Of a stretch of 64,000 nt of DNA, positions 13,301 through 31,999 are shown in pieces. The stretch covers positions 124,001 through 188,000 of IMG/VR virus record IMGVR_UViG_3300047548_001236; one strand, given 5' to 3'. The translations under genes were made by a program, and so were the position numbers. The notes beneath the pieces are model-generated. The model was not told where the DNA came from and did no database searches. It saw only the letters and a list, made by a program, of their open reading frames with translations. Position 1 is the first letter of the stretch, and every line of letters starts with the position of its first letter.

Positions 13301-13714
13301 ATTGGTGCTGAGTCCAACATCACCATGCAAGAGATTGGAAATGCAAATCCACCGTCAAGTATCACAGATGTAGTTGGCACAAACGAATACCTTGGTACCG
13401 ATGGTCTGTTTTATATGGGTGGTCAGAGCACAGCTGGAAATCCTCCTGCAAACTTTGCTGAAAAATTCTACCTAAACGCTGCAGTCGCTGACCCTCAACT
13501 ATCTCAACCGCTGAGACCAGGATCCATCAAATACACTTTCTTTGTTGGTGCAAACGAAACTGTTGATGTCAATACTAACCACGTGTTTGGAATCGATAGA
13601 TATAAGATCACCAAAGGTGCGCTTAATAATCGTAGTGTGTACATAAATAGTAGAGTACTGGATGCGCAACAGACAGGAACATTAAGTGTGAATGTTCTCA
13701 CTAAGGAGCAGTAA
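10334..13714 (+). CDS. Large virion structural protein, paralogue B
   Basis: 1126 aa. Shares SLLGIPR, FRYQPG, KIEYSWYGAIGA and YGASYYIDG motifs with the preceding ORF. Confidence 0.6.
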   Translation: MPKQIKLGFDKGATRSIETDQVLVDIRGNLLRDDAGNFLYTKTNVQLPGFLYARKATSIVVNNKGGVTVSPGGSISVEEQFPEISQVSTSLLGIPRKNVQQSLLADVSVYGIDTNTWEFYRNPVPYNPPEWTTRFNSVYGNRYYPRIAEKPDQQALAIEAFPVPWTFPFGPLFGDQGNRYNPTIFPFYVNFIQMGNDLYQYYMGLGLTDFAQRYFLPRAIDGGANVLVGPPDDVEYNESFEVSMANIERWTLTWMDIRDGKLRDPRNIDEGLRVLTFSRIQANLGVNYDQSNTRPGIQSSVYTYAQLQSREAFRYQPGAISGFTFGVKIQFDETSLNNKIEWGCANDTDQYMFQVAGSQFNIVRRSTVPFTAEAQVENNIPVSPQTPTLSPNPFERPGSEQLGGPSNPVNQLPRYETVIRQDQFNGDSLDGSGPSGYTISFEEVTMYKIEYSWYGAIGAKFYAYIPVGHGECRWVLLHTLIIENTLPYPSLRNPYMHFRYTMVIQDTSGLRAPIYIYKYGASYYIDGADEGSYVYNTFGVESKPVSSTQSVPIIGFQTKDAILNSEGVATPNQKNVYVEKITASSNRNVRVDFVECEGCQGGFGHFYSTSLVNGSSAQPAEFRLRDGSTIEYANNEIMFTEADVGKKVIAPGIFSTYIFPNDPEDMSKAAIKRRVGVSTDNNEPITQNYAVTATAIVNGQTIGLYNTSEDGLVFTGKLYGFDDVAACVTPFTKANIDFRFLNPVSRETTSHFREFRIGVTSKQPSLDVEGNLVFDDAPLDQSSELFLEFSQLQASKNPAGAEIGEHETRVGYVMEDDYRLPRPKGANSGECSTVSITVSNNEVPASYSAINPSNGAPGNFIIFTQGDPGISVLGGEIGVLDVNGNIYSAAKYNNVNVVFTSNPITYSDPEGVVTVYAEISDPITSIPQSKISFKIVSMKARHVQKSVVREFDVFPLYVFVSMHDNARINNIVIKEYDVNSSLSYSPTWLIGAESNITMQEIGNANPPSSITDVVGTNEYLGTDGLFYMGGQSTAGNPPANFAEKFYLNAAVADPQLSQPLRPGSIKYTFFVGANETVDVNTNHVFGIDRYKITKGALNNRSVYINSRVLDAQQTGTLSVNVLTKEQ

Positions 13715-16059
13715 TGGTTACCCCTATACAAGGCCTCAGGGTCACCCTAAGAGCTGCAGATATAGCCGATTCTGTCGAAGCTCTCAAGAACCTCAACATC
13801 AATATTCTCGACCTGGATAGGATCCGTGGAATTGCGGAGGCAGGTGTTCTACCCGAAGATATACGTACGATCAGTGGTCTGACAAGCGACCTTGAAAAAG
13901 AACTGATAGGTATATACGATGAAATTCGGAATTATCCGAACTTTCTCTCTGCCGTCAACGACGGCCGTGTTGCTATTAATGGTAACATGACCGCTAACGC
14001 TTCTGTGATCGCTTCGTCGTTCAAGTTTAACGCTCTTGCTGCTAATAACACTGTTGTCAGCTCAGAACTTTCAACGTCGAGAGTTTCAGCTTGGTCAACG
14101 ATTGGTGATTCTCTCTACTATGGGTCAAAAGTTACTGTTGGAGGTAGCGTCGAGCTTTCCAAGTTGACTATCGACCGTCCTATTAGACAGAGACGCTTTG
14201 AATCAGAAATACCAACACACAAAATCCGTATGCGTATTGACGGTTCAGATTATGACGTATACGCGATGAAGAACATACCTGCATCCTTTACGGGTTATTT
14301 TTCAACAGCTCGCAACTTGTTCATGACGGTGACGAATGCAGGGACGACGACGTGGATACGTCCATCGTGGGTCGTTACAGACCTCGATACAGGCGGTTCC
14401 ATCACATTCCAAAATAGAATTTCGGGAGCGGCAACTAACCCAACGAGAAGTTCCTTTGTTACGATCCTTGGGTCAAGAGCTAAGGAGAGAAGGATTGATT
14501 TCTACTATCCGGTTGCGAATATAACGGCAATGTCTTTGCCTAACATCAAACTGTACGATATACCTGAGGTTGTATTTCCATCGCTAACGACAGCAACGCT
14601 GTTCAATTCCGATTTCAAGGAAATGCCAAACTTCAGAAAATACATGCCAAATCTGACGACGCTTGATGTCTCGTCAACTAACTTGATGAGGTCGGACAAT
14701 CCTGATTTGAGACTGTTTAACGACTCAGTTGTTGCAAGACTCCCTACTACTCTAACAAGACTGACGATGACTAACTGCTTTGCAGGTGTTTCGTCAGCAA
14801 ACCTTGCTGTGTTGGATGATCTTACATACTTTGTTGCATCAGGAAGCACGGTAACAAATCGTAGGATGACAGGCGTATCTCCTGCTGTTAACCCCGCAAA
14901 AATTGACACGTATATAATTAACGCCAATCTGTTTGACAGTATTCATCCATCTGTAAGAGAATCTGACACACTTCGAATATTGAACATATCATACAATAGT
15001 CTTCCTGCAACAGCAAATACGGAACTGTCACCAACTAACCAAGTAATAGAAGAGATCTATAACAACGCTAACAGGAGTCCGTTTATAAACGTAAACGGAA
15101 AGACCTCTTTGAAAGTCTACCACAGAGTAGATTCACCAGCTACTGGAATCATCACAACGCTGTTTACTGGTTGTACTAACCTTACCGACATTCGTGTAAA
15201 TGCTACAAGCATTACAGGAGCCTTACCGTCTTTTGATACGAACAGATCACTTGCAATATTTAACGCTGCATCAACCAGAATACAGCCCGCAGATAGCACA
15301 TATGCTATCAACAATGCAACCTTTGGCGCAATCAACGGTGGTTGCAGAAGCACTCTTCGCGAGTTTACTCTATCGTCTCCTTTACTTACAGGTCAGATTG
15401 AGACAAATGCAATGGATGGGTTGACTGCTTTGGTCACTGTTGTGATAAACTCAACATCGAATGGCATTTCAGGTCCCATTCCTGAGTTTAGACAATCTCC
15501 TGCATTGAGGTCTGTTAATTTGAGGTTGAACAACTTCACGGGATCGCTTCATCAATTCAACGCCAATCCAAACCTCTTGACAATGAACATCAGCGCTAAC
15601 AAGTTGTCAGGAGCGGTTCCTGGACTAAGACTTCCGTCATTGGTTTCGTTGATATTAAACAACAATCAGTTTACCTCTGTTGGTGTTCTCCAATGCCAGT
15701 CTCTGCGTGATTTGGATCTATCCGTCAACTCGATAACGACTATTCCCGATTTCAGTGGTTGTCAGGCTCTTCAAGCTATTATTATGAACTCTAACCCAAT
15801 GACGGGTACAACTCCGTATACTGCGGGCACTTTTGTTAATCTTACAGCGTTAAGAAACCTAAACCTATCAAATTGTGGTTTAAATAGAGCAGCTGTTGAT
15901 CAGATTCTCATCGACCTCGGAAAAAACTACGATTTAAGCCCAAGATCGAGGGTAGAAATAAATCTCGTAGGTAACGCGTCACCTTCACCAGGCGATGAAA
16001 TCCAAACCTTTGTTATTGCACGACTGCGTAGTGCAGGATGGACCATAAGGGTATCGTAA
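13714..16059 (+). CDS. Leucine-rich-repeat protein in the structural gene block
   Basis: Many LxxLxLxxNxL repeats, e.g. LTTLDVSSTNL, LRSVNLRLNNFTGSL, LLTMNISANKLSGAVP, LRDLDLSVNSITTIP, LRNLNLSNCGL. Confidence 0.85.
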   Translation: MVTPIQGLRVTLRAADIADSVEALKNLNINILDLDRIRGIAEAGVLPEDIRTISGLTSDLEKELIGIYDEIRNYPNFLSAVNDGRVAINGNMTANASVIASSFKFNALAANNTVVSSELSTSRVSAWSTIGDSLYYGSKVTVGGSVELSKLTIDRPIRQRRFESEIPTHKIRMRIDGSDYDVYAMKNIPASFTGYFSTARNLFMTVTNAGTTTWIRPSWVVTDLDTGGSITFQNRISGAATNPTRSSFVTILGSRAKERRIDFYYPVANITAMSLPNIKLYDIPEVVFPSLTTATLFNSDFKEMPNFRKYMPNLTTLDVSSTNLMRSDNPDLRLFNDSVVARLPTTLTRLTMTNCFAGVSSANLAVLDDLTYFVASGSTVTNRRMTGVSPAVNPAKIDTYIINANLFDSIHPSVRESDTLRILNISYNSLPATANTELSPTNQVIEEIYNNANRSPFINVNGKTSLKVYHRVDSPATGIITTLFTGCTNLTDIRVNATSITGALPSFDTNRSLAIFNAASTRIQPADSTYAINNATFGAINGGCRSTLREFTLSSPLLTGQIETNAMDGLTALVTVVINSTSNGISGPIPEFRQSPALRSVNLRLNNFTGSLHQFNANPNLLTMNISANKLSGAVPGLRLPSLVSLILNNNQFTSVGVLQCQSLRDLDLSVNSITTIPDFSGCQALQAIIMNSNPMTGTTPYTAGTFVNLTALRNLNLSNCGLNRAAVDQILIDLGKNYDLSPRSRVEINLVGNASPSPGDEIQTFVIARLRSAGWTIRVS

Positions 16060-22865: not shown

Positions 22866-23177
22866 ATGGCGATAGTATACACCTGGAAGATACTTCAAAT
22901 GGATAGAAACGTAGCTGACGACGGTGTTGTCGTTGCCCATTGGAGCTGCTTAGGTAAAGACGAAGTAACGGAAAATACAGACAGGGTGTACGGTTCTGTA
23001 TCGTTCACCCCAAATCCTGAAAGTCCCGATTTCATCCCATACGAAAACCTCACAGAAGAAATTGTTCTAGGATGGTTGTGGAACGGTAAAATCGACAAGC
23101 AGGAATATGAAAATGTTGTTGCTGCAACAATCCAAACGCTGAACAACCCTCCAACCGTATCAGGGCTCCCCTGGTAA
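22866..23177 (+). CDS. Putative tail fibre assembly/accessory protein
   Basis: 103 aa, YTWKI...FIPYENLTEEIVLGWL...GLPW. AAGGAG RBS. Lies directly after a fibre gene. Confidence 0.55.
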   Translation: MAIVYTWKILQMDRNVADDGVVVAHWSCLGKDEVTENTDRVYGSVSFTPNPESPDFIPYENLTEEIVLGWLWNGKIDKQEYENVVAATIQTLNNPPTVSGLPW

Positions 23178-23239: not shown

Positions 23240-24511
23240 ATGACGGATACACTTATCAAACTGCGTAGAAGCGCAGTTCCTGGAAAAATACCATCAGATG
23301 CACAACTGCAGCTGGGTGAGGTCGCCATCAACACATATGATGGTAAGATGTTCTTCAAGCAATCGTCGACGTCGAACACAATCCTCCAAGTCGCAACAAC
23401 GTCTCTAAATTTAAGCGATTTTGCAAGCACCACCTCTGCACAGCTTGCTAGTATCATCAGCGATGAGATCGGTACTGGATCTCTCGTTTTTTCAAATGCA
23501 CCCACGCTAGTAACACCTGTCATTAACGGTAACACAACATTCGACAGTGGAACGCTGTTTATTGATTCGGTCAATAATAGAGTCGGTGTTGGAACTATAT
23601 CTCCCACACAACAATTTGAAGCGACTACCGGTAAATTTTCCAACGTCATCCTTGGTACAGACAGCGCTGATGCAAGCAAACGGTTGTCGATATTTTATGA
23701 TCCTGGTGTTCCCGGTGCAGTAATAGACGCTCCCAGCAACAGATTATTGATTCGTACGTTCGGTTCTGAAAGAATGAGAGTCGAGCAGACCGGATTCGTT
23801 GGAATAGGTAACACGGCACCGTCTGAAAGACTTCATGTTGACGGTAATATCAGACTTTCGGGAGCTGTTGTTGATTATGTCGGTTCTAAAGGAACGCTAG
23901 GACAGGTCCTCACATCTGACGGTTCAAAATCATACTGGGCTGACCCAACTGGCGGTGGTAGCGGTGGTATTGCTACAGCTTCACAATCAATTGTTCGCGA
24001 TATATTTACTGGCAACTCTGCTGCTTCGAGCTACACTCTTTCTACTACACCAATAGCAGAACGTTTTGTTATAGTTACCATAAACGGTATTGTTCAGCAA
24101 GATGCTGCATATAGTGTTGCAGGGACTTCGCTTGTTTTCGATGAGCCGCTTGCAAACACAGACGTGGTCGAGGCAAGAACGTTTGTTCCATACAACCCAT
24201 TTATGACGGATGCGTCTGCGACATTTGCCAACACATCGCCTAGTCAAGTTTTAGATACCTTTGACTCAACTTTGTATAGAACAGCTAAGTACCTGGTACA
24301 AATCGCCAACACGTCTTCCTATCAAGCGGCTGAGGTGTTGTTGATTCACGATGGTTCACAGGTATTCATTACTGAATATGCTCAACTGGCAACAGGAACG
24401 TCTCTTGGTGTAATCGACGCCGACATATCAGGTGGAAATGTCAGACTGCTTGTCAACCCATCATTTCCAAACGTCACGGCAAAATCAATCCGTTATAGCA
24501 TAGGTGTATGA
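23240..24511 (+). CDS. Tail fibre-like protein
   Basis: IKLRRSAVPGKIP...GEVAINTYDGK N-terminus, VGIGNTAPSERLHV repeats, and a YRTAKYLVQ...EVLLIHDG C-terminal domain. Confidence 0.75.
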   Translation: MTDTLIKLRRSAVPGKIPSDAQLQLGEVAINTYDGKMFFKQSSTSNTILQVATTSLNLSDFASTTSAQLASIISDEIGTGSLVFSNAPTLVTPVINGNTTFDSGTLFIDSVNNRVGVGTISPTQQFEATTGKFSNVILGTDSADASKRLSIFYDPGVPGAVIDAPSNRLLIRTFGSERMRVEQTGFVGIGNTAPSERLHVDGNIRLSGAVVDYVGSKGTLGQVLTSDGSKSYWADPTGGGSGGIATASQSIVRDIFTGNSAASSYTLSTTPIAERFVIVTINGIVQQDAAYSVAGTSLVFDEPLANTDVVEARTFVPYNPFMTDASATFANTSPSQVLDTFDSTLYRTAKYLVQIANTSSYQAAEVLLIHDGSQVFITEYAQLATGTSLGVIDADISGGNVRLLVNPSFPNVTAKSIRYSIGV

Positions 24512-24512
24512 C

Positions 24513-25484
24513 ATGACTACAAAAGTTAAACTAAGCAACTTGTCTCAAGAAGTGCTCGCAGGAGTTGGAGGTGGATCTGGCGGAAACGGAACATCTTCTG
24601 TAGACTTCCATAATATCGGCGGTGGCGTTGAAGTTACACACCGCTACATCGGAGCATATGACGCTTGTTTTTGGGATGCTACAGACGGGCTTTATAAAAG
24701 CGGGTTAAACTTAGATAATGCTACTAGTTTATTCAATACTGCTGAAGATCGACTAGCAAGCGTAAGTGGTATTTACCCTATTGTTGGCTTAACAAGAAAC
24801 GAAGCAAGGTTGATGGCAGCAAATAACGGGACAGGATGGAGACAGTTAGATTTTACACTAGCATCTGCCATTCAGCTACTTTATCTCGTAGAGTATCAAA
24901 CATTCTTTAGTCAAAATGTGTTAGGAGCAGGTAACACTAATGGAAGTTATATAGCAAGCAGTAGCAACCAAACAGACAGTCCACACACTATAGCAGGCGC
25001 TGGAAATGTGTTGGGTAACAGCAGTACCAATATTACAACAGGCGCAGGTGTAAATGCTAAACCTGGTACAAGTTTTATGAAGTATCGTGGAATCGAGAAC
25101 TTTTACGGTAATTGTTGGAATTGGGTTGACGGTCTAAACATTAATATAGGGACAGCCGGTACAGCATTCTATACCAACAATAGAGCAGATTTTATTGATG
25201 ACGTTTCAACAAATATGATTCTGTTAGCAAACAATATTGCAACCTCTTCTGGATTTATTCGCAATATTAATACAGGCAATCTGGGATTCTTACCGACTGA
25301 CACTGTGGGTGCGTCAAGTACAACTTATATAACTGATCAAGCATTTTTGACAACTTCATTAAACCGTGTCGCCCATCTCGGTGGTCTTGCGAATTCTGGT
25401 GTGGATGCTGGGGTTTTCTGCTGGGATCTGTCTAATGATTCGTCGCTTCGGCTTCGGTGTTTCGGTGCACGCGCCTGCTTCTAA
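24513..25484 (+). CDS. DGR target protein 1 (C-type lectin/FGE-like adhesin domain, Mtd-like)
   Basis: GIENFYGNCWNWVDG motif and a C-terminal VR (LGG...AGVF.W.L....R.R.FGARACF). Start at 24513 preferred because of the AGGTG RBS. Confidence 0.9.
   Translation: MTTKVKLSNLSQEVLAGVGGGSGGNGTSSVDFHNIGGGVEVTHRYIGAYDACFWDATDGLYKSGLNLDNATSLFNTAEDRLASVSGIYPIVGLTRNEARLMAANNGTGWRQLDFTLASAIQLLYLVEYQTFFSQNVLGAGNTNGSYIASSSNQTDSPHTIAGAGNVLGNSSTNITTGAGVNAKPGTSFMKYRGIENFYGNCWNWVDGLNINIGTAGTAFYTNNRADFIDDVSTNMILLANNIATSSGFIRNINTGNLGFLPTDTVGASSTTYITDQAFLTTSLNRVAHLGGLANSGVDAGVFCWDLSNDSSLRLRCFGARACF
25369..25475 (+). repeat. Variable repeat VR1
   Basis: Aligns ungapped to 27111-27217 over 107 bp with 19 mismatches, 18 of them at TR adenines (the exception is GTC to GTT). 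Confidence 0.95.
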
Positions 25485-25533
25485 ACAGATGCAGACAACG
25501 ATCTGAAAGATCGTTGTCCGTGTATAGAAGCAG
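25475..25533 (+). other. IMH region plus nested hairpin after VR1
   Basis: Inner stem GACAACGATCT-GAA-AGATCGTTGTC (25494-25518). Outer stem CTGCTTCTA (25475-25483) pairs with TAGAAGCAG (25525-25533). Confidence 0.85.
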
Positions 25534-25552
25534 ATAAATAAAAGGAAAACAA

Positions 25553-25804
25553 ATGAAAAGCTACAGTCTACATCAACAACCAACATACAGCCCAAGTGGC
25601 AAGGAACTTAGGATTAATTTCAACCATCAATTAGTTGAAACAAGTAATGAATGGGAAGAAACATCGAGTATGCGGGTTTGTGATCAGATTCTGTTGTCTG
25701 TTACTGCTACTAGAGAACAGATTATAGACGCAATCAACCTAATCGATCCATCACAAGCCGAAACATTAGCAGACGGTTGGTTTAGACAAGAGGAAAAATT
25801 ATGA
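25553..25804 (+). CDS. Small protein between the DGR targets, homologous to 28374-28610
   Basis: GATAAATA (25533-25540) and AAGGA RBS upstream. LRINFNHQLVE resembles IRVHWNHEQVE. Confidence 0.75.
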   Translation: MKSYSLHQQPTYSPSGKELRINFNHQLVETSNEWEETSSMRVCDQILLSVTATREQIIDAINLIDPSQAETLADGWFRQEEKL

Positions 25805-26991
25805 ATGTAAGAATAGGCCCAGAAAATCGAACCCTTCTTAATCTAGGTTGGAATCAAGTAAACGATACCTATACACCAACAACAACTAGAAATACAGTGA
25901 GTGCAGTTCATCTCAGAATGCGCCGTTGTTTGCTCAATTTGAATGGTACAGTCAACTACTATCTTGATCCAAATGATAGTACCAAGAAAGCTGACGGGAC
26001 ACCTTCTGTTCTCACGGGTGCTGATGGATATGTGATGGTGGAAATACCCAAGTTTTCATTCAAATACACATACGCCGCAGGGCAGTATTTCTGGGAAGTA
26101 GTGATCGGTAAACGAGATGGCTACACACTTCACCCGGCATTCATAAAGGATGGGGTTGAAGTAGAGAACCGTTATATCGGTGCCTATGATGCCTGCGTAT
26201 GGGATGCGACTACCGATACATATATCAGCGGTCTAAACTTAGATAACTCAGATACATTGATTGACATTGCTGTTGATAGATTGGCAAGTGTATCCGGTGT
26301 TTATCCAATGGTTGGTCAGACTCGAGCAAGATTTAGATCACTTGCTGATAACAATGGTACGGGTTGGAGGCAGTTAGATTTTTGGCTAGCGAGCGCTGTT
26401 CAGCTCCTCTATCTGATTGAGTATGATACTTTTAAAAGCCAGCAAGTGTTAGGATTGGGTAATGTCAGTTCATCATATTTGACGTCTAGCAGCAATCAGT
26501 CGGATAGCCCTCACACTATCGCTGGTGCATCAAATGCGTTAGGTAATCGATCTACCAACGGAACGCAACCAAGCGCTGGTGCAAGACCTGGGATTGCTTA
26601 TATGAGTTATCGTGGAATCGAGAACTTTTACGGTAATTGTTGGAATTGGGTTGACGGGTTTAACCTGATTAATTTTGTAGCTTGGGTCACTAACAATAGA
26701 ACAAACTTTGTCGATGATGTAACAACAAATATGACTAATATCGGTACACTCGCAAGCACATCTGGATTTGCAACAGATATTGTCAATTATGGTGGTACAT
26801 TTTTACCGAGTACCGTGGGTGGGTCATCTACTACACGATTGACAGACCAACTATTTGTATCTTCTGGTAACCGTGTCGCCCGTCTCGGTGGTAGTGCGAA
26901 TCTTGGTGTGGATGCTGGGGTCTTCTGCTGGGCTCTGAATGATGATTCGTCGTATCGGAATCGGCCGATCGGTGCGCGCGCCTGCTTCTAA
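25801..26991 (+). CDS. DGR target protein 2 (C-type lectin/FGE-like adhesin domain)
   Basis: VMVEIPKF, LHPAF, YIGAYDA and GIENFYGNCWNWVDG motifs, with a C-terminal VR. Confidence 0.9.
   Translation: MNVRIGPENRTLLNLGWNQVNDTYTPTTTRNTVSAVHLRMRRCLLNLNGTVNYYLDPNDSTKKADGTPSVLTGADGYVMVEIPKFSFKYTYAAGQYFWEVVIGKRDGYTLHPAFIKDGVEVENRYIGAYDACVWDATTDTYISGLNLDNSDTLIDIAVDRLASVSGVYPMVGQTRARFRSLADNNGTGWRQLDFWLASAVQLLYLIEYDTFKSQQVLGLGNVSSSYLTSSSNQSDSPHTIAGASNALGNRSTNGTQPSAGARPGIAYMSYRGIENFYGNCWNWVDGFNLINFVAWVTNNRTNFVDDVTTNMTNIGTLASTSGFATDIVNYGGTFLPSTVGGSSTTRLTDQLFVSSGNRVARLGGSANLGVDAGVFCWALNDDSSYRNRPIGARACF
26876..26982 (+). repeat. Variable repeat VR2
   Basis: Aligns ungapped to the TR over 107 bp with 16 mismatches, 15 at TR adenines (the exception is the T of AAT to CCG). 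Confidence 0.95.
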
Positions 26992-27040
26992 ACAGATGCA
27001 GTCAACGATCTGAAAGATCGTTGTCCGTGTATAGAAGCAG
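26982..27040 (+). other. IMH region plus nested hairpin after VR2
   Basis: Same element as after VR1 with a single substitution. Inner stem CAACGATCT-GAA-AGATCGTTG (27003-27023). Confidence 0.85.
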
Positions 27041-27048
27041 TATAAATA
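27041..27048 (+). promoter_or_regulatory. T4-type late promoter upstream of TR/RT
   Basis: Exact TATAAATA in the intergenic gap. Confidence 0.8.
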
Positions 27049-27073
27049 AAACATGTGAAAGGAGAATACACTA

Positions 27074-27331
27074 ATGATTAGAATAGGGGTGCAGTATCAA
27101 TGCCCAGTATTCACCCATCTCGGTGGTAATGCGAATAATGGTGTGAATGCTGGGGTCTTCTACTGGAATCTGAATAATGATTCGTCGAATCGGAATCGGA
27201 ATATCGGTGCACACGCCAATCCCCAAAGCAATGCTGTAAAGATACTGACTCCTCACCTCTTGGTGAAATCTGTCGCCACAAAAAGTTTGGTAGGGAAACC
27301 GAAGAACTTGGCTGGGGGATGCAGGAAATGA
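27074..27331 (+). CDS. TR-containing ORF (85 aa), possibly translated and coupled to the RT
   Basis: AAGGAG RBS about 9 nt upstream. The TR is in frame. Its TGA (27329-27331) overlaps the RT ATG (27328-27330). Confidence 0.5.
   Translation: MIRIGVQYQCPVFTHLGGNANNGVNAGVFYWNLNNDSSNRNRNIGAHANPQSNAVKILTPHLLVKSVATKSLVGKPKNLAGGCRK
27111..27217 (+). repeat. DGR template repeat (TR)
   Basis: Contains 27 adenines, including 10 in-frame AAT codons. It is the adenine-retaining copy of VR1 and VR2, and diverges after ...CACGCC (IMH*). Confidence 0.95.
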
Positions 27332-28377
27332 AACGATACGGGAATCTATTTGAAAAAATCTGCGACTTAGATAATCTTCTACTTGCACATCAGAACGCTA
27401 GATTAGGAAAATCTAGCTATAAAGAAGTTCAAATGGTAGACAAAAATCCACGTTATTATGCTGAAAAACTAAGACATCTTTTACAATCTAAGACGTTTAC
27501 AACAAGTAAGTATCAAATATTCTGGAAAGATTGTGGAACTAAACAGAGATACATCTACAAGTTACCTTACTGGCCAGATAGAATAGTTCAACATGCTCTG
27601 ATGCAAATTGTAGAACCGATATTCACAAGGACTTTAATCCGTGATACTTTCCAGTCGATAAAAGAGAGAGGTACACACGATTGTAGAAAACGGCTTCAAA
27701 AAGCAATAGAAAATATCAAAGAAGACTCATATGTTTTAAACTTTGACATTAAGCAGTTTTACCCATCTGTCGACAATCAACTACTAAAAGTGTTAGTGAG
27801 ACGTAAAATCAAATGTAAAGATACACTTTGGTTGCTTGATGATATTATTGACTCAACAAAAGGTCTCCCTGTAGGAAACTACAGTAGCCAGATTTTAGGT
27901 AATTTATACTTATCTGCTATGGATCACTATGCAAAAGAAACTCTAGGAATCAAACACTATTTTAGATATTGCGATGATATAGTTATTCTCGCTGACACAA
28001 AAGAGCAATGTAATTTATATAAGAAAAAACTATTTAATATAGTCGATCGGTTAAAGTTAACTGTGAAAAGCAACTGGCAGGTTTTCCCGTTTTCAACAAG
28101 AGCGGTAGATTTTATTGGTTGGGTATTTTCGAAAAGCCGGGTGCGGCTTAGAAAGAGAACTGCGCGTAGATTCACAAATAAAGTTATGATGATAAAGAAG
28201 AATCACAGGCGAATATCACCGGCTCATGCTGTATGCTCTATTATGTCCTACTGGGGTCAGTTTAAACACATTAATTCAAAAAGACTCTGGAAACAGCACA
28301 TAGATAAAGAATTTATGAATAAGACAGATAAATTTTTCGATAAACAAAATCTATTTAGAGAGGTGATCTGCAAATGA
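27328..28377 (+). CDS. DGR reverse transcriptase
   Basis: MKRYGNLFEKI start, DRIVQHAL, FDIKQFYPSVD, the DGR-type GLPVGNYSSQ motif, catalytic RYCDD and DFIGW. No maturase or endonuclease domain. Confidence 0.95.
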   Translation: MKRYGNLFEKICDLDNLLLAHQNARLGKSSYKEVQMVDKNPRYYAEKLRHLLQSKTFTTSKYQIFWKDCGTKQRYIYKLPYWPDRIVQHALMQIVEPIFTRTLIRDTFQSIKERGTHDCRKRLQKAIENIKEDSYVLNFDIKQFYPSVDNQLLKVLVRRKIKCKDTLWLLDDIIDSTKGLPVGNYSSQILGNLYLSAMDHYAKETLGIKHYFRYCDDIVILADTKEQCNLYKKKLFNIVDRLKLTVKSNWQVFPFSTRAVDFIGWVFSKSRVRLRKRTARRFTNKVMMIKKNHRRISPAHAVCSIMSYWGQFKHINSKRLWKQHIDKEFMNKTDKFFDKQNLFREVICK

Positions 28378-28610
28378 TTAAAGTTCATTCAGACAACAAG
28401 CTAGAAACATTTCAAATACTAGGACCAATCATCCGAGTTCATTGGAACCACGAACAAGTTGAACAAGAAGAAATGGATAATGGTAAAAGAGTGACTTGGA
28501 TTGCCGATGAGATAGTTGTACCGTCAGATATCTCTACAGAAGAGTTGATAAAAACACTCGAGCAATACAATGCTCCTGTGAATGAAATAATGCAAGAGTG
28601 GAATAAATAA
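28374..28610 (+). CDS. Small protein coupled to the RT, homologous to 25553-25804
   Basis: ATGA overlap with the RT stop. IRVHWNHEQVE...ADEIVV...STEELIKTL...W pattern. Confidence 0.75.
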   Translation: MIKVHSDNKLETFQILGPIIRVHWNHEQVEQEEMDNGKRVTWIADEIVVPSDISTEELIKTLEQYNAPVNEIMQEWNK

Positions 28611-28639
28611 ACAAAAGGCGCCATTAGGGAGAGTGATCT

Positions 28640-31600
28640 ATGGCAAACGATAAAAGATTTGTAGCCAAGAATGGTCTAACTACTCAAAATATTTTGTTTG
28701 TAGATAATATCCAGTCTGCAAATAACACCGTTTTGATAGAAATGAAACCAACGAACGAGTTAGTCGTCGCTACAGATGAGCAAGCACTGGTTGTGTCAAA
28801 TACACCAGGTTCTATCCTCACAGTCAACGATTCTACTGGCATACCTACTATTCAGGTAACCGATTACGGTAATATTCTTGTTGGTGATCTTGTAGATAAC
28901 GGTGTAGATAAAATCCAAGCTAGTGGGAGTTTGTTTTCTGAAACCATAAAAACTTCCAAACTATCATTCAAGACTCAGCAAGGTTCAGATGTAATATCAT
29001 CTGAACTAACTAGTAACACTGAAGTTACGTTTATTGGTGATAGCAACGATATACTGTCAATGGGATTAGACCCTAATAGTTCACTTTTTACAGTCAACGA
29101 TATTTCTGGTGTGCCTTCGATTGAAGTTGTTGACGATGGTACTGTAAGATTAGCAGAAATTATCGGGAATGTCGGCGTTGGATTAGCGTCGCCGTCAGAA
29201 AAATTGCATGTGCAAGGAAATGTAAGAGCAACGTCGTTGATGGCTGCTAACGGTTCTGCTGCTTCCCCAGCCTTTGATTTTGCTGCTGACCCTAACACTG
29301 GTATGTTTTCTGCTGGAGCTGATACGATTGGGTTCTCTACGAACGGCACGATAGCGGCAGCTATTACATCGACAGGTAACCTGCGTCTGTTCAACACTGC
29401 CGGAACCTTCTACACGGAAATCTCCAACCAACCGACAGCTAATAACACTCTGACACTACCGGCCACAGGCAACGTGACCCTTGTGTCGGGAACGATGGTT
29501 CCAACTACTGGTACTGGCGCGACTGGAACGTGGGGTATCTCAGTAACTGGTAATGCGGCAACTGCAACCACATTACAAACCTCAAGAAATATCAATGGTA
29601 CACTTTTCAACGGTTCTGCTGATATTACGATACCGCGTGTAAGAGCAGCTGACGATCGTACTGTCGCACCGTCGGATTTCTTAACAGCGTATACTACTTT
29701 TGGATTTGGTTCATGGAATAACAATAATACCTCCCCCTATAGCGATTATTTAGTACTTCGCAACTATACAGACTCTACTGGCGGAAATGATAATATGCTA
29801 TCGTTCCGTAAAGATACGTTAGGCATAAGACTGTGGCAAGCACCATATGGCAATAACTCACCTTTCTCAACTTTTAAAGATGTAGCTTGGACAGACGGTA
29901 CTAATGCAACAGGCACTTGGAACATTAGCGTTTCTACGGCAAACAATGCTACCAATCTCAACGGGCAATCAGCTTCATATTATCTTGATTGGACCAATGT
30001 AACCAATAAGCCAGATCCTGTAATAACCCTGGCGGGCGATCTTACTGGTTCTGTTACTTTGACTGATTTAGGATCAGGCACACTCACTGCAACAATTGCC
30101 GCTAATTCAGTTGCTCTTGGCGCAGATACTACAGGTAATTATGTTGCTTCCCTTATACAGGGAACTGGTGTAACTATTACAAATAATACGGGTGAATCAG
30201 CTACACCGACGATTGCTATTGGACAAGACGTAAGTATATCTGCAAATGTCCAATTTGCAAATATGATTGTTTCTGGTGATCTAACAGTTAACGGTACGAC
30301 TACAACAATCAACACCACAAATCTTACCACAAAAGATACACTGATTGAACTTAACAGTGGAGCAAATACTAGTATCAATGATTCTGGTATTCTAATCAAT
30401 CGAGGATCCACTGGGGCTAATGCTTTTATTGGTTGGAATGAAACAACAGATAAATTTGTTGTAGGTACGACAACCGCAACTGGGAATACAACAGGTAACC
30501 TAGCTGTAACAGCTGGAACCTTAGTAGCTGCGTCATTTGAAGGTTCTTTGAGTGGTAATGCAACCACCTCAACTACCGCCAATAATATCGCTGGTGGAGT
30601 CGCTGGAGGGGTCCCTTATCAAAGTGGAGTTGGAACAACCGCTATAACAGCCGCAGGTACTGCCGGCCAGGTTTTTGTTTCTGCGGGTTCAAGTGCCCCA
30701 TCATGGCAGACGTTGACTCTTGAGAATATTCCTGATGCGTGGGTTAAACGTAGTGTCAAAGCAGCCACGACTGCAAATATTACTTTATCGGGTGCACAAA
30801 CTATCGACGGTGTTTCGGTAGTCGCAGGGGATAGAGTTCTTGTAAAGAACCAAACTGCTGCCGCTGAAAATGGTATCTATGTCGTAGCAGCGGGTGCTTG
30901 GACAAGAGCAGCTGATGCTAATATTTCATCAGAATTAGCAGCAGCAACTGTAGGTATTGACCAAGGTACTACAAACGGCGGTAAAACTTATGATACCGAT
31001 TTTAAGGGCACTGATACTCTTGGTACAACTGCAATGTCTTGGTACAGAGTATTAGATGCTGCTTCTATAGGTTCCGAAGTTCAAGCATATGATGCCGGTC
31101 TGCAATCCATTGCAGGTCTAACCACCGCGGCAGATCGTATGATATATACAACTGCAGCAGATACATATGCTGTTACTACATTAACAGCTGCTGGTAGAGC
31201 AATTCTAGACGATGCTGATGCTGCAGCCCAGCGCACTACACTTGGACTTGGAACGGCCAATAACGTCACCTTTGCAACTGTAACAGCTACAACATCTTTG
31301 ACTTCTCCATTACTGACTAATGCTGGTACTCTATCACTTTCAGCTACTGGTTCAAACGTCATTGCTGCATCAACAAATGGTTCAGAACGTTTACGTATTA
31401 CAGACACCGGTAGAGTAGGTATTGGCACTACAATTCCTACAACATCACTTCATGTAACTGCGACTCCCCCAGCAAGCATCCCTACTGCTGGGGCTGCTTC
31501 TTCACACGTAGCCATCGGAACAAATTCTTATGGGACGTCGATTGGTACCCTATCAAGCGGCAGAGGTTATATCCAGCAACAAAGATTTGATGGTAATACG

Positions 31601-31999
31601 GCTGTTTATGATCTTTTGCTCAATCCGAACGGCGGTAACGTAGGTATTGGCACAACAAATCCTTCGACAATTCTTCACGCAAATGGCGAAATAACTGCTA
31701 CGGACTTTAATACAACATCAGACCTAAATGTCAAAGAAAATATTGAAATTATACCAGATGCTGTTGTAAAAGTTTCTCAAATAAATGGTGTGACATTTAA
31801 TTTTAAAGCCGATAATACCAAGCAGAGACACGCAGGTGTTATTGCACAGGATGTAGAAAAGGTACTTCCTGAAGCCGTTAAAGAAATGTCGGATGGAATT
31901 AAACACGTTGCTTACGGAAACTTGATAGGTCTGCTTGTAGAAGCCATAAAAGATCAACAAAAACAAATAGATGAGCTAAAAGCTCTTATCAATAAATAA
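28640..31999 (+). CDS. Long tail fibre with C-terminal S74-like chaperone
   Basis: MANDKRFVAKNGL N-terminus, a TITLSGAQTIDGV...GDRVLVKNQ module, and C-terminal SDLNVKENI...GVIAQDVE...VAYGNL. Confidence 0.85.
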   Translation: MANDKRFVAKNGLTTQNILFVDNIQSANNTVLIEMKPTNELVVATDEQALVVSNTPGSILTVNDSTGIPTIQVTDYGNILVGDLVDNGVDKIQASGSLFSETIKTSKLSFKTQQGSDVISSELTSNTEVTFIGDSNDILSMGLDPNSSLFTVNDISGVPSIEVVDDGTVRLAEIIGNVGVGLASPSEKLHVQGNVRATSLMAANGSAASPAFDFAADPNTGMFSAGADTIGFSTNGTIAAAITSTGNLRLFNTAGTFYTEISNQPTANNTLTLPATGNVTLVSGTMVPTTGTGATGTWGISVTGNAATATTLQTSRNINGTLFNGSADITIPRVRAADDRTVAPSDFLTAYTTFGFGSWNNNNTSPYSDYLVLRNYTDSTGGNDNMLSFRKDTLGIRLWQAPYGNNSPFSTFKDVAWTDGTNATGTWNISVSTANNATNLNGQSASYYLDWTNVTNKPDPVITLAGDLTGSVTLTDLGSGTLTATIAANSVALGADTTGNYVASLIQGTGVTITNNTGESATPTIAIGQDVSISANVQFANMIVSGDLTVNGTTTTINTTNLTTKDTLIELNSGANTSINDSGILINRGSTGANAFIGWNETTDKFVVGTTTATGNTTGNLAVTAGTLVAASFEGSLSGNATTSTTANNIAGGVAGGVPYQSGVGTTAITAAGTAGQVFVSAGSSAPSWQTLTLENIPDAWVKRSVKAATTANITLSGAQTIDGVSVVAGDRVLVKNQTAAAENGIYVVAAGAWTRAADANISSELAAATVGIDQGTTNGGKTYDTDFKGTDTLGTTAMSWYRVLDAASIGSEVQAYDAGLQSIAGLTTAADRMIYTTAADTYAVTTLTAAGRAILDDADAAAQRTTLGLGTANNVTFATVTATTSLTSPLLTNAGTLSLSATGSNVIAASTNGSERLRITDTGRVGIGTTIPTTSLHVTATPPASIPTAGAASSHVAIGTNSYGTSIGTLSSGRGYIQQQRFDGNTAVYDLLLNPNGGNVGIGTTNPSTILHANGEITATDFNTTSDLNVKENIEIIPDAVVKVSQINGVTFNFKADNTKQRHAGVIAQDVEKVLPEAVKEMSDGIKHVAYGNLIGLLVEAIKDQQKQIDELKALINK

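What the first reader, a model, noticed from the sequence alone, without database searches (positions are those of the whole stretch)
24513..26991. One TR diversifies two tandem adhesins with different attachment architectures
Both genes end in a VR and the same IMH/hairpin, and the VRs differ from each other at many adenine positions, consistent with independent retrohoming events. Target 1 has a short MTTKVKLSNL...GGGSGG anchor/linker fused straight to the lectin core. Target 2 has about 120 extra N-terminal residues (VMVEIPKF, LHPAF). The phage may display two independently randomised binding tips on different fibres.
Basis: partly seen in the sequence, partly recalled or inferred. Interest (0 to 1): 0.72.

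Follow-up and report, generated by a model that had tools for sequence, protein, structure and literature searches.

The report
Two-target phage diversity-generating retroelement
A 283-kb T4-like phage carries one mutagenic reverse-transcriptase cassette that rewrites the tips of two neighbouring lectin-fold tail proteins; this is a clear but ordinary example of a known system, and one target is an unusual shortened copy.

Summary
One template repeat (TR, 27111-27217) and the genome's only reverse transcriptase serve two variable repeats, VR1 (25369-25475) and VR2 (26876-26982). VR1 has 18 of 19 mismatches at TR adenines and VR2 has 15 of 16. Both VRs are followed by a 58-nt flank with a hairpin that differs at one base. 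A close relative's TR has two private non-adenine changes, and both of its VRs carry them, so both targets were rewritten after the lineages split.

The interpretation needs correcting. Both proteins have the TaqVP-like C-type-lectin fold. About 85 of T2's "extra" residues belong to the family's conserved body, not to an attachment module. T1 has had its first 92 or so ancestral codons replaced by 37 new ones that are predicted disordered; every T1 orthologue found is 376-382 aa. T1 and T2 come from deeply separated subfamilies and are not recent duplicates. The T1-small gene-T2 order recurs in relatives, and phage DGRs with two targets are already published. Virion display on different fibres and variation within populations were not testable.

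Side findings are a small acidic protein family that always follows these targets, concerted evolution of the two flanks, and no Avd.

This is a new member of a known kind, of modest interest.

The parts
23240..24511 (+). Fibre-like gene (423 aa) immediately upstream of T1. Its stop lies 1 nt before the T1 start. It is a candidate carrier of T1.
   Evidence: PHROG tail-fibre hits at the N-terminus and DUF4183. A gene with a homologous C-terminal domain precedes the T1 orthologue in L018/L019, L021 and L026.
24513..25484 (+). Target 1 (T1, 323 aa): a TaqVP-like C-type-lectin variable protein that lacks the family's N-terminal beta-subdomain. Residues 1-37 are a unique leader predicted to be disordered.
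   Evidence: phrog_5302 E = 5e-50. AF2 pLDDT 76, with residues 1-41 below 50. TaqVP 5vf4 Foldseek E = 2e-8 and VIA Z = 21.4. Breakpoint at codon 38. dN/dS 0.05 outside the VR.
25369..25475 (+). VR1, the last 36 codons of T1.
   Evidence: 19 mismatches to the TR, 18 at TR adenines.
25476..25533 (+). Target-recognition flank of VR1. It diverges from the TR here (IMH versus IMH*). Inner hairpin 25496-25516 (8-bp stem, TGAAA loop); outer stem 25476-25483 with 25525-25532.
   Evidence: DNA fold -17.1 kcal/mol, z = -7.0. 57 of 58 nt identical to the VR2 flank.
25553..25804 (+). s83: small acidic protein (83 aa, pI 4.7), paralogue of s78. Its stop overlaps the T2 start (ATGA).
   Evidence: Family alignment and HMM. 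dN/dS 0.08-0.15 against orthologues.
25801..26991 (+). Target 2 (T2, 396 aa): full-length TaqVP-like C-type-lectin variable protein.
   Evidence: phrog_5302 E = 4e-84. AF2 pLDDT 87.6, pTM 0.90. TaqVP Foldseek E = 6e-11 and VIA Z = 25.8 over residues 38-396. More than 2,400 homologues.
26876..26982 (+). VR2, the last 36 codons of T2.
   Evidence: 16 mismatches to the TR, 15 at TR adenines.
26983..27040 (+). Target-recognition flank of VR2. Inner hairpin 27003-27023.
   Evidence: DNA fold -14.3 kcal/mol, z = -6.3.
27111..27217 (+). Template repeat (TR). It lies inside an 85-codon relic ORF (27074-27331) that resembles a target C-terminus.
   Evidence: It is 97% identical in the relative L018.
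27218..27318 (+). IMH*-side spacer between the TR and the RT, presumably part of the TR transcript. It has no hairpin.
   Evidence: Fold z = -1.3. That it belongs to the transcript is inferred by analogy with BPP-1.
27319..28377 (+). DGR reverse transcriptase, the only RT in the genome. The real start is probably the ATG at 27328, as in relatives.
   Evidence: RVT_1 and phrog_1423. The VGNYSSQ and YCDD motifs are invariant in alignment A5. 95% identical in L018.
28374..28610 (+). s78: small acidic protein (78 aa, pI 4.7). Its start overlaps the RT stop (ATGA).
   Evidence: The family follows the RT or the target gene in 36 of 36 informative IMG/VR loci.
28640..31999 (+). Fibre gene (1119 aa). 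Its first ~170 codons belong to the mosaic block shared with L018/L023.
   Evidence: PHROG tail-fibre hits. The shared block ends near 29149.

Best explanation
This is a diversity-generating retroelement (DGR) in the tail-fibre module of a 283-kb T4-like myovirus (Gp23 capsid, Gp18 sheath).

Inferred by analogy with BPP-1: the single RT copies a TR-containing transcript into cDNA and misincorporates opposite template adenines. That cDNA replaces the last ~107 nt of any gene that ends in a TR-homologous VR followed by the IMH-side flank and hairpin.

Shown here: two genes meet those cis requirements, T2 (full-length TaqVP-like lectin-fold protein) and T1 (a paralogue from a different, deeply separated subfamily). 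Each VR carries its own set of adenine-site substitutions. Each also tracks its own genome's TR at non-adenine sites. So both have been rewritten in trans from the one TR since this phage diverged from its nearest sampled relative.

Inferred: ten AAT codons in the TR give each target an independently randomisable C-terminal surface, most likely a receptor-binding surface.

Shown: the order T1-s-T2-TR-RT-s is inherited, not new. It occurs in relatives with T2 at 91% and 75% identity.

Inferred origin: two cassettes of the form T-(TR-RT)-s were joined and one TR-RT was lost. The two 58-nt recognition flanks are since kept identical within each genome by gene conversion.

Specific to this genome (shown): T1 has lost the family's conserved N-terminal beta-subdomain and begins with a 37-residue disordered leader directly after a fibre gene. 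Its core still evolves under purifying selection at the same rate as its full-length sister. It is therefore probably still a working protein, but how or whether it attaches to the virion is not known.
For: - TR/VR anatomy and adenine specificity.
- Only one TR, two VRs and one RT in the genome.
- Hairpin flanks, and a compensatory different stem at the same position in L022. They fall within the published range of a 7-10 bp stem, a GRNA-type loop and 4-34 bp from the VR (PMC3240598).
- L018's TR has private changes, C>T at 27121 and G>T at 27193. Both L018 VRs carry them, and both window VRs carry the window state.
- VR dS is 0.10-0.36 with dN/dS 0.6-1.8, against dS of 0.95 or more with dN/dS 0.05 in the rest of T1 and T2.
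- Fold: TaqVP is the top match for both proteins, followed by TvpA, FGE and Mtd.
- Orthology and arrangement in relatives.
- Tree: T1 and T2 sit in separate clades, each with 99/97 support.
- T1 orthologues are all 376-382 aa, and the breakpoint is at codon 38.
- W_T1's core is no more diverged from outgroups than its sister L026_T1 is.
- Flank concerted evolution, with 1 and 0 differences within genomes against 5 between them.
- T4-like context.
Against: - No read-level data. The public runs are held as assembled contigs, so ongoing diversification of either VR in a population was not seen.
- In the relative's lineage the same VR2' protein occurs in 5 contigs and VR1' in 13. A strain variant differs outside the VR but not inside it, so turnover is not fast there.
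- No Avd or HRDC gene was found. Avd is considered essential in BPP-1.
- The hairpin loop is TGAAA (5 nt, or GAA if the T-A pair closes) rather than a strict 4-nt GRNA, and the stem is only 50% GC.
- T1 lacks a conserved subdomain and is a singleton form.
- The purifying-selection signal is measured against full-length orthologues and may pre-date the truncation.
- Retrohoming needs only cis elements, so a rewritten VR1 does not prove that T1 is functional.
Confidence: 0.8

Rival explanations
1. T1 is a decaying relic. Its VR keeps being overwritten only because the IMH-side flank and hairpin persist, and it no longer makes a useful virion protein. The phage would then have effectively one diversified adhesin, T2.
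For: T1 lacks about 85 conserved residues that all 12 nearest orthologues keep. The new N-terminus is predicted disordered and the model confidence is lower, 76 against 88. The missing segment is not encoded elsewhere in the genome. Retrohoming is independent of protein function (PMC3240598, abstract).
Against: The ORF is intact, has an AGGTG ribosome-binding site and starts 1 nt after the fibre gene's stop. dN/dS is 0.05 outside the VR. There is no rate acceleration relative to the full-length sister. TaqVP still aligns over 248 residues at Z = 21.4. An independently truncated T1' (232 aa) in L018 is intact and identical in 13 contigs.
Confidence: 0.2
2. Only one of the two VRs is still an active target. 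The other differs from the TR because of old events or ordinary mutation.
For: Each VR carries one non-adenine mismatch (25415 C>T and 26967 T>G). No population data are available. The relative's VRs look stable across samples.
Against: Both VRs co-vary with lineage-specific non-adenine changes in their own TR. Both keep near-identical flanks and hairpins. Both have far lower dS than the surrounding gene.
Confidence: 0.1
3. The tandem pair is an assembly artefact: two strain variants of one gene stitched in series.
For: The 172-nt VR-plus-flank repeat does disturb assemblies. Several contigs of relatives jump from T1' straight to TR-RT.
Against: T1 and T2 are only 63% identical outside the VR. 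They belong to different deep clades. Each has separate orthologues, and the same order T1'-s-T2' is assembled independently in L018, L019, L024 and L021.
Confidence: 0.03

Closest known systems
Bordetella phage BPP-1 DGR (mtd-avd-TR-brt)
   Same: RT plus TR. The VR sits at the 3' end of a C-type-lectin-fold tail protein. Substitutions are adenine-specific. There is an IMH/IMH* distinction and a hairpin downstream of the VR. Mtd aligns to T1 and T2 at Z = 11.
   Different: This locus has two targets instead of one. No Avd was found. The order is target-TR-RT-small acidic gene. T1 and T2 have no Mtd_N domain, although some family members do. The loop is TGAAA rather than GAAA.
Thermus aquaticus DGR variable protein TaqVP (PDB 5VF4)
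   Same: It is the best structural match for both targets: Foldseek E = 6e-11 and 2e-8, VIA Z = 25.8 and 21.4, 22% identity, over almost the whole chain.
   Different: TaqVP is bacterial and not a phage fibre component. The sequence-profile match is only marginal (E = 0.07). T1 lacks the N-terminal part.
[quoted passage not shown]
   Same: One TR serves two VRs in two lectin-fold proteins of different overall build in a myovirus. The VRs differ from each other within a phage.
   Different: There the two targets are unrelated in sequence, and target 1 has its VR at the 5' end with Ig-like domains behind it. Here both targets are paralogues of one family with 3'-terminal VRs and no Ig domains. 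The genome here is a 283-kb T4-like freshwater phage.
Multi-target bacterial DGRs (about 13% of cassettes have two targets; up to eight in Treponema denticola and Stenotrophomonas, as cited in PMC10743442)
   Same: A single TR/RT acts in trans on several paralogous lectin-fold targets.
   Different: Those are cellular surface proteins. Here the targets sit in a phage tail-fibre module.

Membership tests
Diversity-generating retroelement | Reverse transcriptase gene next to a template repeat | tested here: met
   RVT_1 E = 2.5e-15 and phrog_1423 E = 2e-99. The RT begins about 100 nt after the TR. It is the only RT in the genome.
Diversity-generating retroelement | DGR-type RT motif [LIV]GxxxSQ, plus the catalytic YxDD. 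The motif definition is from my own knowledge of the DGR literature. | tested here: met
   VGNYSSQ and YCDD are present in the translation. G186, N187, Y188, S190, Q191 and Y217-D220 are invariant across 9 RTs.
Diversity-generating retroelement | TR/VR pair whose differences are confined to TR adenines | tested here: met
   18 of 19 for VR1 and 15 of 16 for VR2, with p = 7e-13 and 3e-10.
Diversity-generating retroelement | VR at the 3' end of an ORF, with the IMH-side flank differing from the TR's IMH* | tested here: met
   Homology to the TR ends at 25475 and 26982, 9 nt before each stop codon. The flanks then diverge from the TR.
Diversity-generating retroelement | Hairpin or cruciform shortly downstream of the VR (7-10 bp stem, 4-nt GRNA loop, 4-34 bp away; PMC3240598) | tested here: met
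   An 8-11 bp stem 20 nt after each VR, z = -7.0 and -6.3. L022 has a different stem sequence at the same position. Deviations: the loop is TGAAA and the stem is about 50% GC.
Diversity-generating retroelement | Accessory protein Avd (PF05635-like) or HRDC | tested here: not met
   No PF05635 or PF00570 match in the 283-kb genome. A small acidic protein family occupies the position after the RT instead.
Diversity-generating retroelement | Ongoing VR diversification within a population | tested here: inconclusive
   Only assembled contigs could be laid on the region. They break around the VRs, but holes prove nothing.
Multi-target DGR | Two or more VRs matching one TR, each shown to receive information from that TR | tested here: met
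   There are two VRs and one TR. Lineage-private non-adenine TR changes are mirrored in both VRs of L018, and the window's state in both window VRs.
C-type-lectin-fold DGR variable proteins (TaqVP, TvpA, Mtd) | CLec/FGE-type fold with the VR in its C-terminal part | tested here: met
   TaqVP Z = 25.8 for T2 and 21.4 for T1, followed by TvpA, FGE and Mtd at Z = 10-12. The VR is the last 36 codons. Surface exposure of the VR residues was not examined because no model coordinates were available.
Mtd-like fibre-tip protein | Mtd_N attachment domain and trimeric assembly on tail fibres | tested here: not met
   No Mtd_N in T1 or T2. It is present in homologues such as P0024. Oligomeric state and virion location were not tested.
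Tentaclins (PMC10743442) | [quoted passage not shown] | tested here: not met
   Both VRs are 3'-terminal. No Ig-like domains appear in Pfam or in the models.

The most novel reading that the evidence does not exclude
The small acidic s-family (s83 and s78) may be an undescribed obligatory partner of TaqVP-like phage DGR targets. It could be a target-specific chaperone or adaptor, or the functional replacement for Avd in this Avd-less DGR clade. The truncated T1 may be a working lectin tip that docks through a disordered leader. If so, the variable C-terminal half could be grafted onto different fibre N-termini, as appears to have happened independently in L018.
Probability: 0.3. Interest if true: 0.55.

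Novelty: new member of a known kind. Interest (0 to 1): 0.3.

Why it matters
This adds a clean, internally controlled example of one TR rewriting two targets in a very large T4-like environmental phage. The strongest new piece of evidence is comparative: private non-adenine TR changes are copied into both VRs. That offers a cheap test for whether a target is live when no reads are available.

The locus could also be used to ask three questions:
- Which protein replaces Avd in this DGR clade?
- How are two recognition flanks kept identical?
- How much of the lectin scaffold is needed to display a VR?

None of this changes the current picture of DGRs.

Tried and rejected
- **Read-level test of VR variation.** All runs offered were Logan contigs. 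The source run X1 shows contig breaks at the shared repeats and no contig over the VRs or the RT. Only 82% of the run was read and holes prove nothing, so no conclusion was drawn.
- **The 25533->27070 "joint" in X2, and contigs L023/L025 that run T1'-TR-RT.** I first read these as single-target relatives. I rejected that because the same sample also holds the missing s84-T2' piece as a separate 1.5-kb scaffold (L020). Assembly collapse across the 172-nt repeat is therefore at least as likely as a real deletion.
- **Complex prediction with T2 + RT + s78.** The result was no verdict. The score did not drop when T2 was swapped out. It is not used as evidence for or against any binding.
- **Searches that found nothing.** Megablast of the locus against GenBank phages gave no match. 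Pfam and NCBIfam found nothing for T1, T2, s83 or s78. The Atlas search for s78 gave only unnamed viral clusters and sub-0.6 TM structural neighbours.
- **A separately encoded copy of T1's missing N-terminal subdomain.** None was found in the genome.
- **A donor for T1's 37-residue leader.** Only weak low-complexity matches to fibre genes turned up.
- **Recent tandem duplication of T1 and T2.** Rejected by the tree.
- **Accelerated evolution of the truncated T1.** The long branch in the tree comes from its unrelated leader. Core identities to outgroups equal those of its sister.
Full report
**What is there.**
The window is bases 124001-188000 of a 282,855-bp IMG/VR virus record from a freshwater metagenome. 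It encodes a Gp23-type capsid protein, a Gp18-type sheath and several fibre genes with Peptidase_S74 chaperone ends. It is therefore a large T4-like myovirus.

Inside the fibre cluster the gene order on the + strand is as follows:
- fibre gene 23240-24511 (423 aa)
- T1, 24513-25484 (323 aa)
- a small gene, s83, 25553-25804
- T2, 25801-26991 (396 aa)
- the TR, 27111-27217
- the RT, 27319-28377
- a small gene, s78, 28374-28610
- fibre gene 28640-31999

**Check of the observation.**
A 172-nt repeat family links the ends of T1 and T2 to the stretch before the RT.
- In ungapped register the TR is 107 nt with 27 adenines, 20 of them in ten AAT codons.
- VR1 differs from the TR at 19 positions, 18 of them TR adenines. 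VR2 differs at 16 positions, 15 of them adenines.
- The two VRs differ from each other at 19 positions, 17 at TR adenines. The hypergeometric probabilities are 7e-13, 3e-10 and 5e-11.
- Homology to the TR stops at 25475 and 26982. The next 58 nt of the two targets differ at one base and fold into a nested hairpin: an 8-11 bp inner stem around TGAAA and an outer 8-bp stem that includes the stop codon. The z-scores are -7.0 and -6.3, whereas the stretch after the TR does not fold.
- This agrees with the published requirements for DGR targets: an IMH plus a 7-10 bp hairpin with a GRNA-type loop, 4-34 bp from the VR (PMC3240598). The loop and GC content deviate slightly.
- In the T4-like relative L022 both targets carry a hairpin at the same position with a completely different stem sequence, which argues that the structure is selected.
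- The genome has one TR, two VRs and one RT.

**Are both targets really served by this TR?**
No reads were available. The runs are held as contigs, and the gaps over the VRs are uninformative. A comparative test worked instead.

ENA contigs L018, L019 and L024 carry the same cassette, with T2 at 91%, the RT at 95% and s78 at 99% amino-acid identity. Their TR has two private non-adenine changes, at window positions 27121 and 27193. Both of their VRs carry those changes, while both window VRs carry the window's TR state. Information has therefore flowed from each genome's TR into both of its VRs since the lineages split.

Consistent with this, dS inside the VRs is 0.10-0.36 with dN/dS 0.6-1.8. 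Elsewhere in T1 and T2 dS is 0.95 or more with dN/dS about 0.05.

**What the proteins are.**
Neither target hits Pfam or NCBIfam. Both hit phrog_5302, annotated "tail protein", and T2 has more than 2,400 homologues.
- AF2 models are confident: T2 has pLDDT 87.6 and pTM 0.90, and T1 has pLDDT 76.1.
- The best structural match for both is the Thermus aquaticus DGR variable protein TaqVP. Foldseek E is 6e-11 and 2e-8, and VIA Z is 25.8 and 21.4.
- TvpA, formylglycine-generating enzymes and BPP-1 Mtd follow at Z 10-12.
- So "lectin core" is right.

**The N-terminal difference.**
- T1 and T2 are 63% identical over T1 35-323 and T2 115-396.
- T2 residues 38-123 (VMVEIPKF, LHPAF) are present in nearly all homologues, contain many invariant columns, are modelled at pLDDT 95-98, and the alignment to TaqVP starts at residue 38. 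They are part of the family's conserved body rather than a variable adaptor. Only about the first 37 residues of T2 look like a leader.
- Some homologues carry Mtd_N in that position.
- All 12 nearest T1 orthologues are 376-382 aa and keep this segment. None shares T1's first 37 residues.
- Nucleotide homology to the closest orthologue (L026, 83% amino-acid identity) begins at 24624, which is T1 codon 38 and orthologue codon 93.
- T1 residues 1-41 are predicted disordered, and the missing piece is not encoded elsewhere in the genome.
- T1 in this phage is therefore a 5'-replaced, shortened derivative.

T1 still looks like a live gene:
- It has a ribosome-binding site and starts 1 nt after the fibre gene's stop.
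- dN/dS is 0.05.
- Its core is no more diverged from outgroups than its full-length sister.
- TaqVP still aligns over 248 residues.

A second, independent truncation exists in L018. Its 232-aa T1' joins a fibre-like 84-residue N-terminus to a C-terminal half that is 100% identical to the full-length L026 protein.

**History of the pair.**
- A maximum-likelihood tree without the VR places T1 and T2 in different deep clades, each with 99/97 support.
- The T1 clade (100/100) is sister to targets of single-target cassettes. By contrast, the two L022 targets fall in one starred (100/94) subclade with only P0017 between them, which points to a recent duplication in that lineage.
- The order T1'-s-T2' is found in L021 (T1' full-length; T2' 75% identical) as well as in L018, L019 and L024.
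- All 13 more distant IMG/VR loci have a single target in the order T-TR-RT-s.
- The likeliest scenario, which is inferred, is that two T-(TR-RT)-s units were joined and one TR-RT was lost.
- The two 58-nt flanks evolve in concert. There are 1 and 0 differences within the window and L018 respectively, but 5 between genomes. The 150 nt upstream of the VRs are only about 60% identical between the paralogues. Gene conversion between the repeats is the simplest cause.

**Mosaicism.**
Contig L023 is 39 kb, with T5-type dNMPase and small-terminase Pfams. It shares with this genome only window 25038-25543 and 26586-29149, at 81-89% nucleotide identity. The cassette, from mid-T1 to the first ~170 codons of the next fibre gene, is therefore a module exchanged between otherwise dissimilar phages.

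**Accessory genes.**
No Avd-like (PF05635) or HRDC gene is present (family equivalence from PMC10053308). Instead each target is followed by a member of a small acidic protein family (pI about 4.5, 78-110 aa, no database family).

In IMG/VR, 36 of 36 loci with enough upstream sequence have this gene immediately after the DGR RT (24 loci; with the s start overlapping the RT stop where ORF coordinates were checked) or directly after a T2-like gene with no RT nearby (12 loci). All 23 loci with at least 2.4 kb upstream have a T2-like gene in reach. Its function is unknown. A three-chain complex prediction gave no verdict.

**Comparison with what is known.**
Multi-target DGRs are established. About 13% of cassettes have two targets. 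Phage examples with two lectin-fold targets of different topology, whose VRs differ within a phage, have been described (PMC10743442). This locus is a further example, with paralogous rather than unrelated targets, in a very large T4-like environmental phage.

**Verdict.**
This is a new member of a known kind, with interest about 0.3.

Noticed in passing
window 25553-25804 and 28374-28610; loci L005-L071: A family of small acidic proteins (78-110 aa, pI about 4.5, no Pfam, PHROG or NCBIfam model) always lies just downstream of TaqVP-like target genes, either directly or after an intervening TR-RT. This holds in 36 of 36 informative IMG/VR loci. It may be a target partner or an Avd substitute.
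   Followed up: partly
window 25476-25533 vs 26983-27040; L018 1040-1097 vs 2556-2613: The two IMH/hairpin flanks are identical or differ by 1 nt within a genome but differ at 5 of 58 positions between genomes. The adjacent coding DNA of the paralogues is only about 60% identical. This is concerted evolution, probably by gene conversion.
   Followed up: partly
window 25038-25543 and 26586-29149; L023, L025: Only the DGR cassette, from mid-T1 to the N-terminus of the next fibre gene, is shared at 81-89% nucleotide identity with contigs whose other genes look T5-like. The cassette is a horizontally exchanged module with breakpoints inside genes.
   Followed up: partly
L023 10001-12317, L025 308-2624, run X2 contig (joint 25533->27070): Several assemblies join T1' directly to TR-RT and leave out s84-T2'. 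In one sample the missing piece is a separate 1.5-kb scaffold (L020). This is either assembly collapse across the 172-nt repeat or a real recombinational deletion.
   Followed up: partly
L022 432-9983: A T4-like relative (capsid gene 72% nucleotide identity) has two closely related, evidently recently duplicated targets 6 kb apart. Each is followed by an s-family gene, and a TR follows the second target. No RT lies between the TR and the s gene or anywhere in the 14 kb read, and there are several non-adenine TR/VR mismatches. This may be a decaying DGR, or the RT may lie elsewhere.
   Followed up: no
window 27074-27331: The TR lies inside an 85-codon ORF whose product resembles a target C-terminus. 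It is 91% conserved and called as a gene in L018. It is probably a relic of the TR's origin rather than a gene.
   Followed up: no
window 27319 vs 27328: The RT ORF's first ATG is 27319, but relatives start at the MKRYGNLF methionine, which corresponds to 27328. The shorter 349-aa product is more likely.
   Followed up: no
window 22866-23177: A DUF7936 small gene (E = 1e-22) sits between fibre genes. A 48% identical copy lies in the same relative position in L021.
   Followed up: no
window 13714-16059: A 781-aa protein in the tail/baseplate block carries leucine-rich repeats (LRR_8 E = 4e-14), which are unusual in phage structural modules.
   Followed up: no
L026 end, L027 end: Contigs carrying T1 orthologues, including a 374-kb one, end right after the VR/hairpin. 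This suggests that a second copy of the repeat breaks those assemblies too, so two-target relatives may be under-counted.
   Followed up: no
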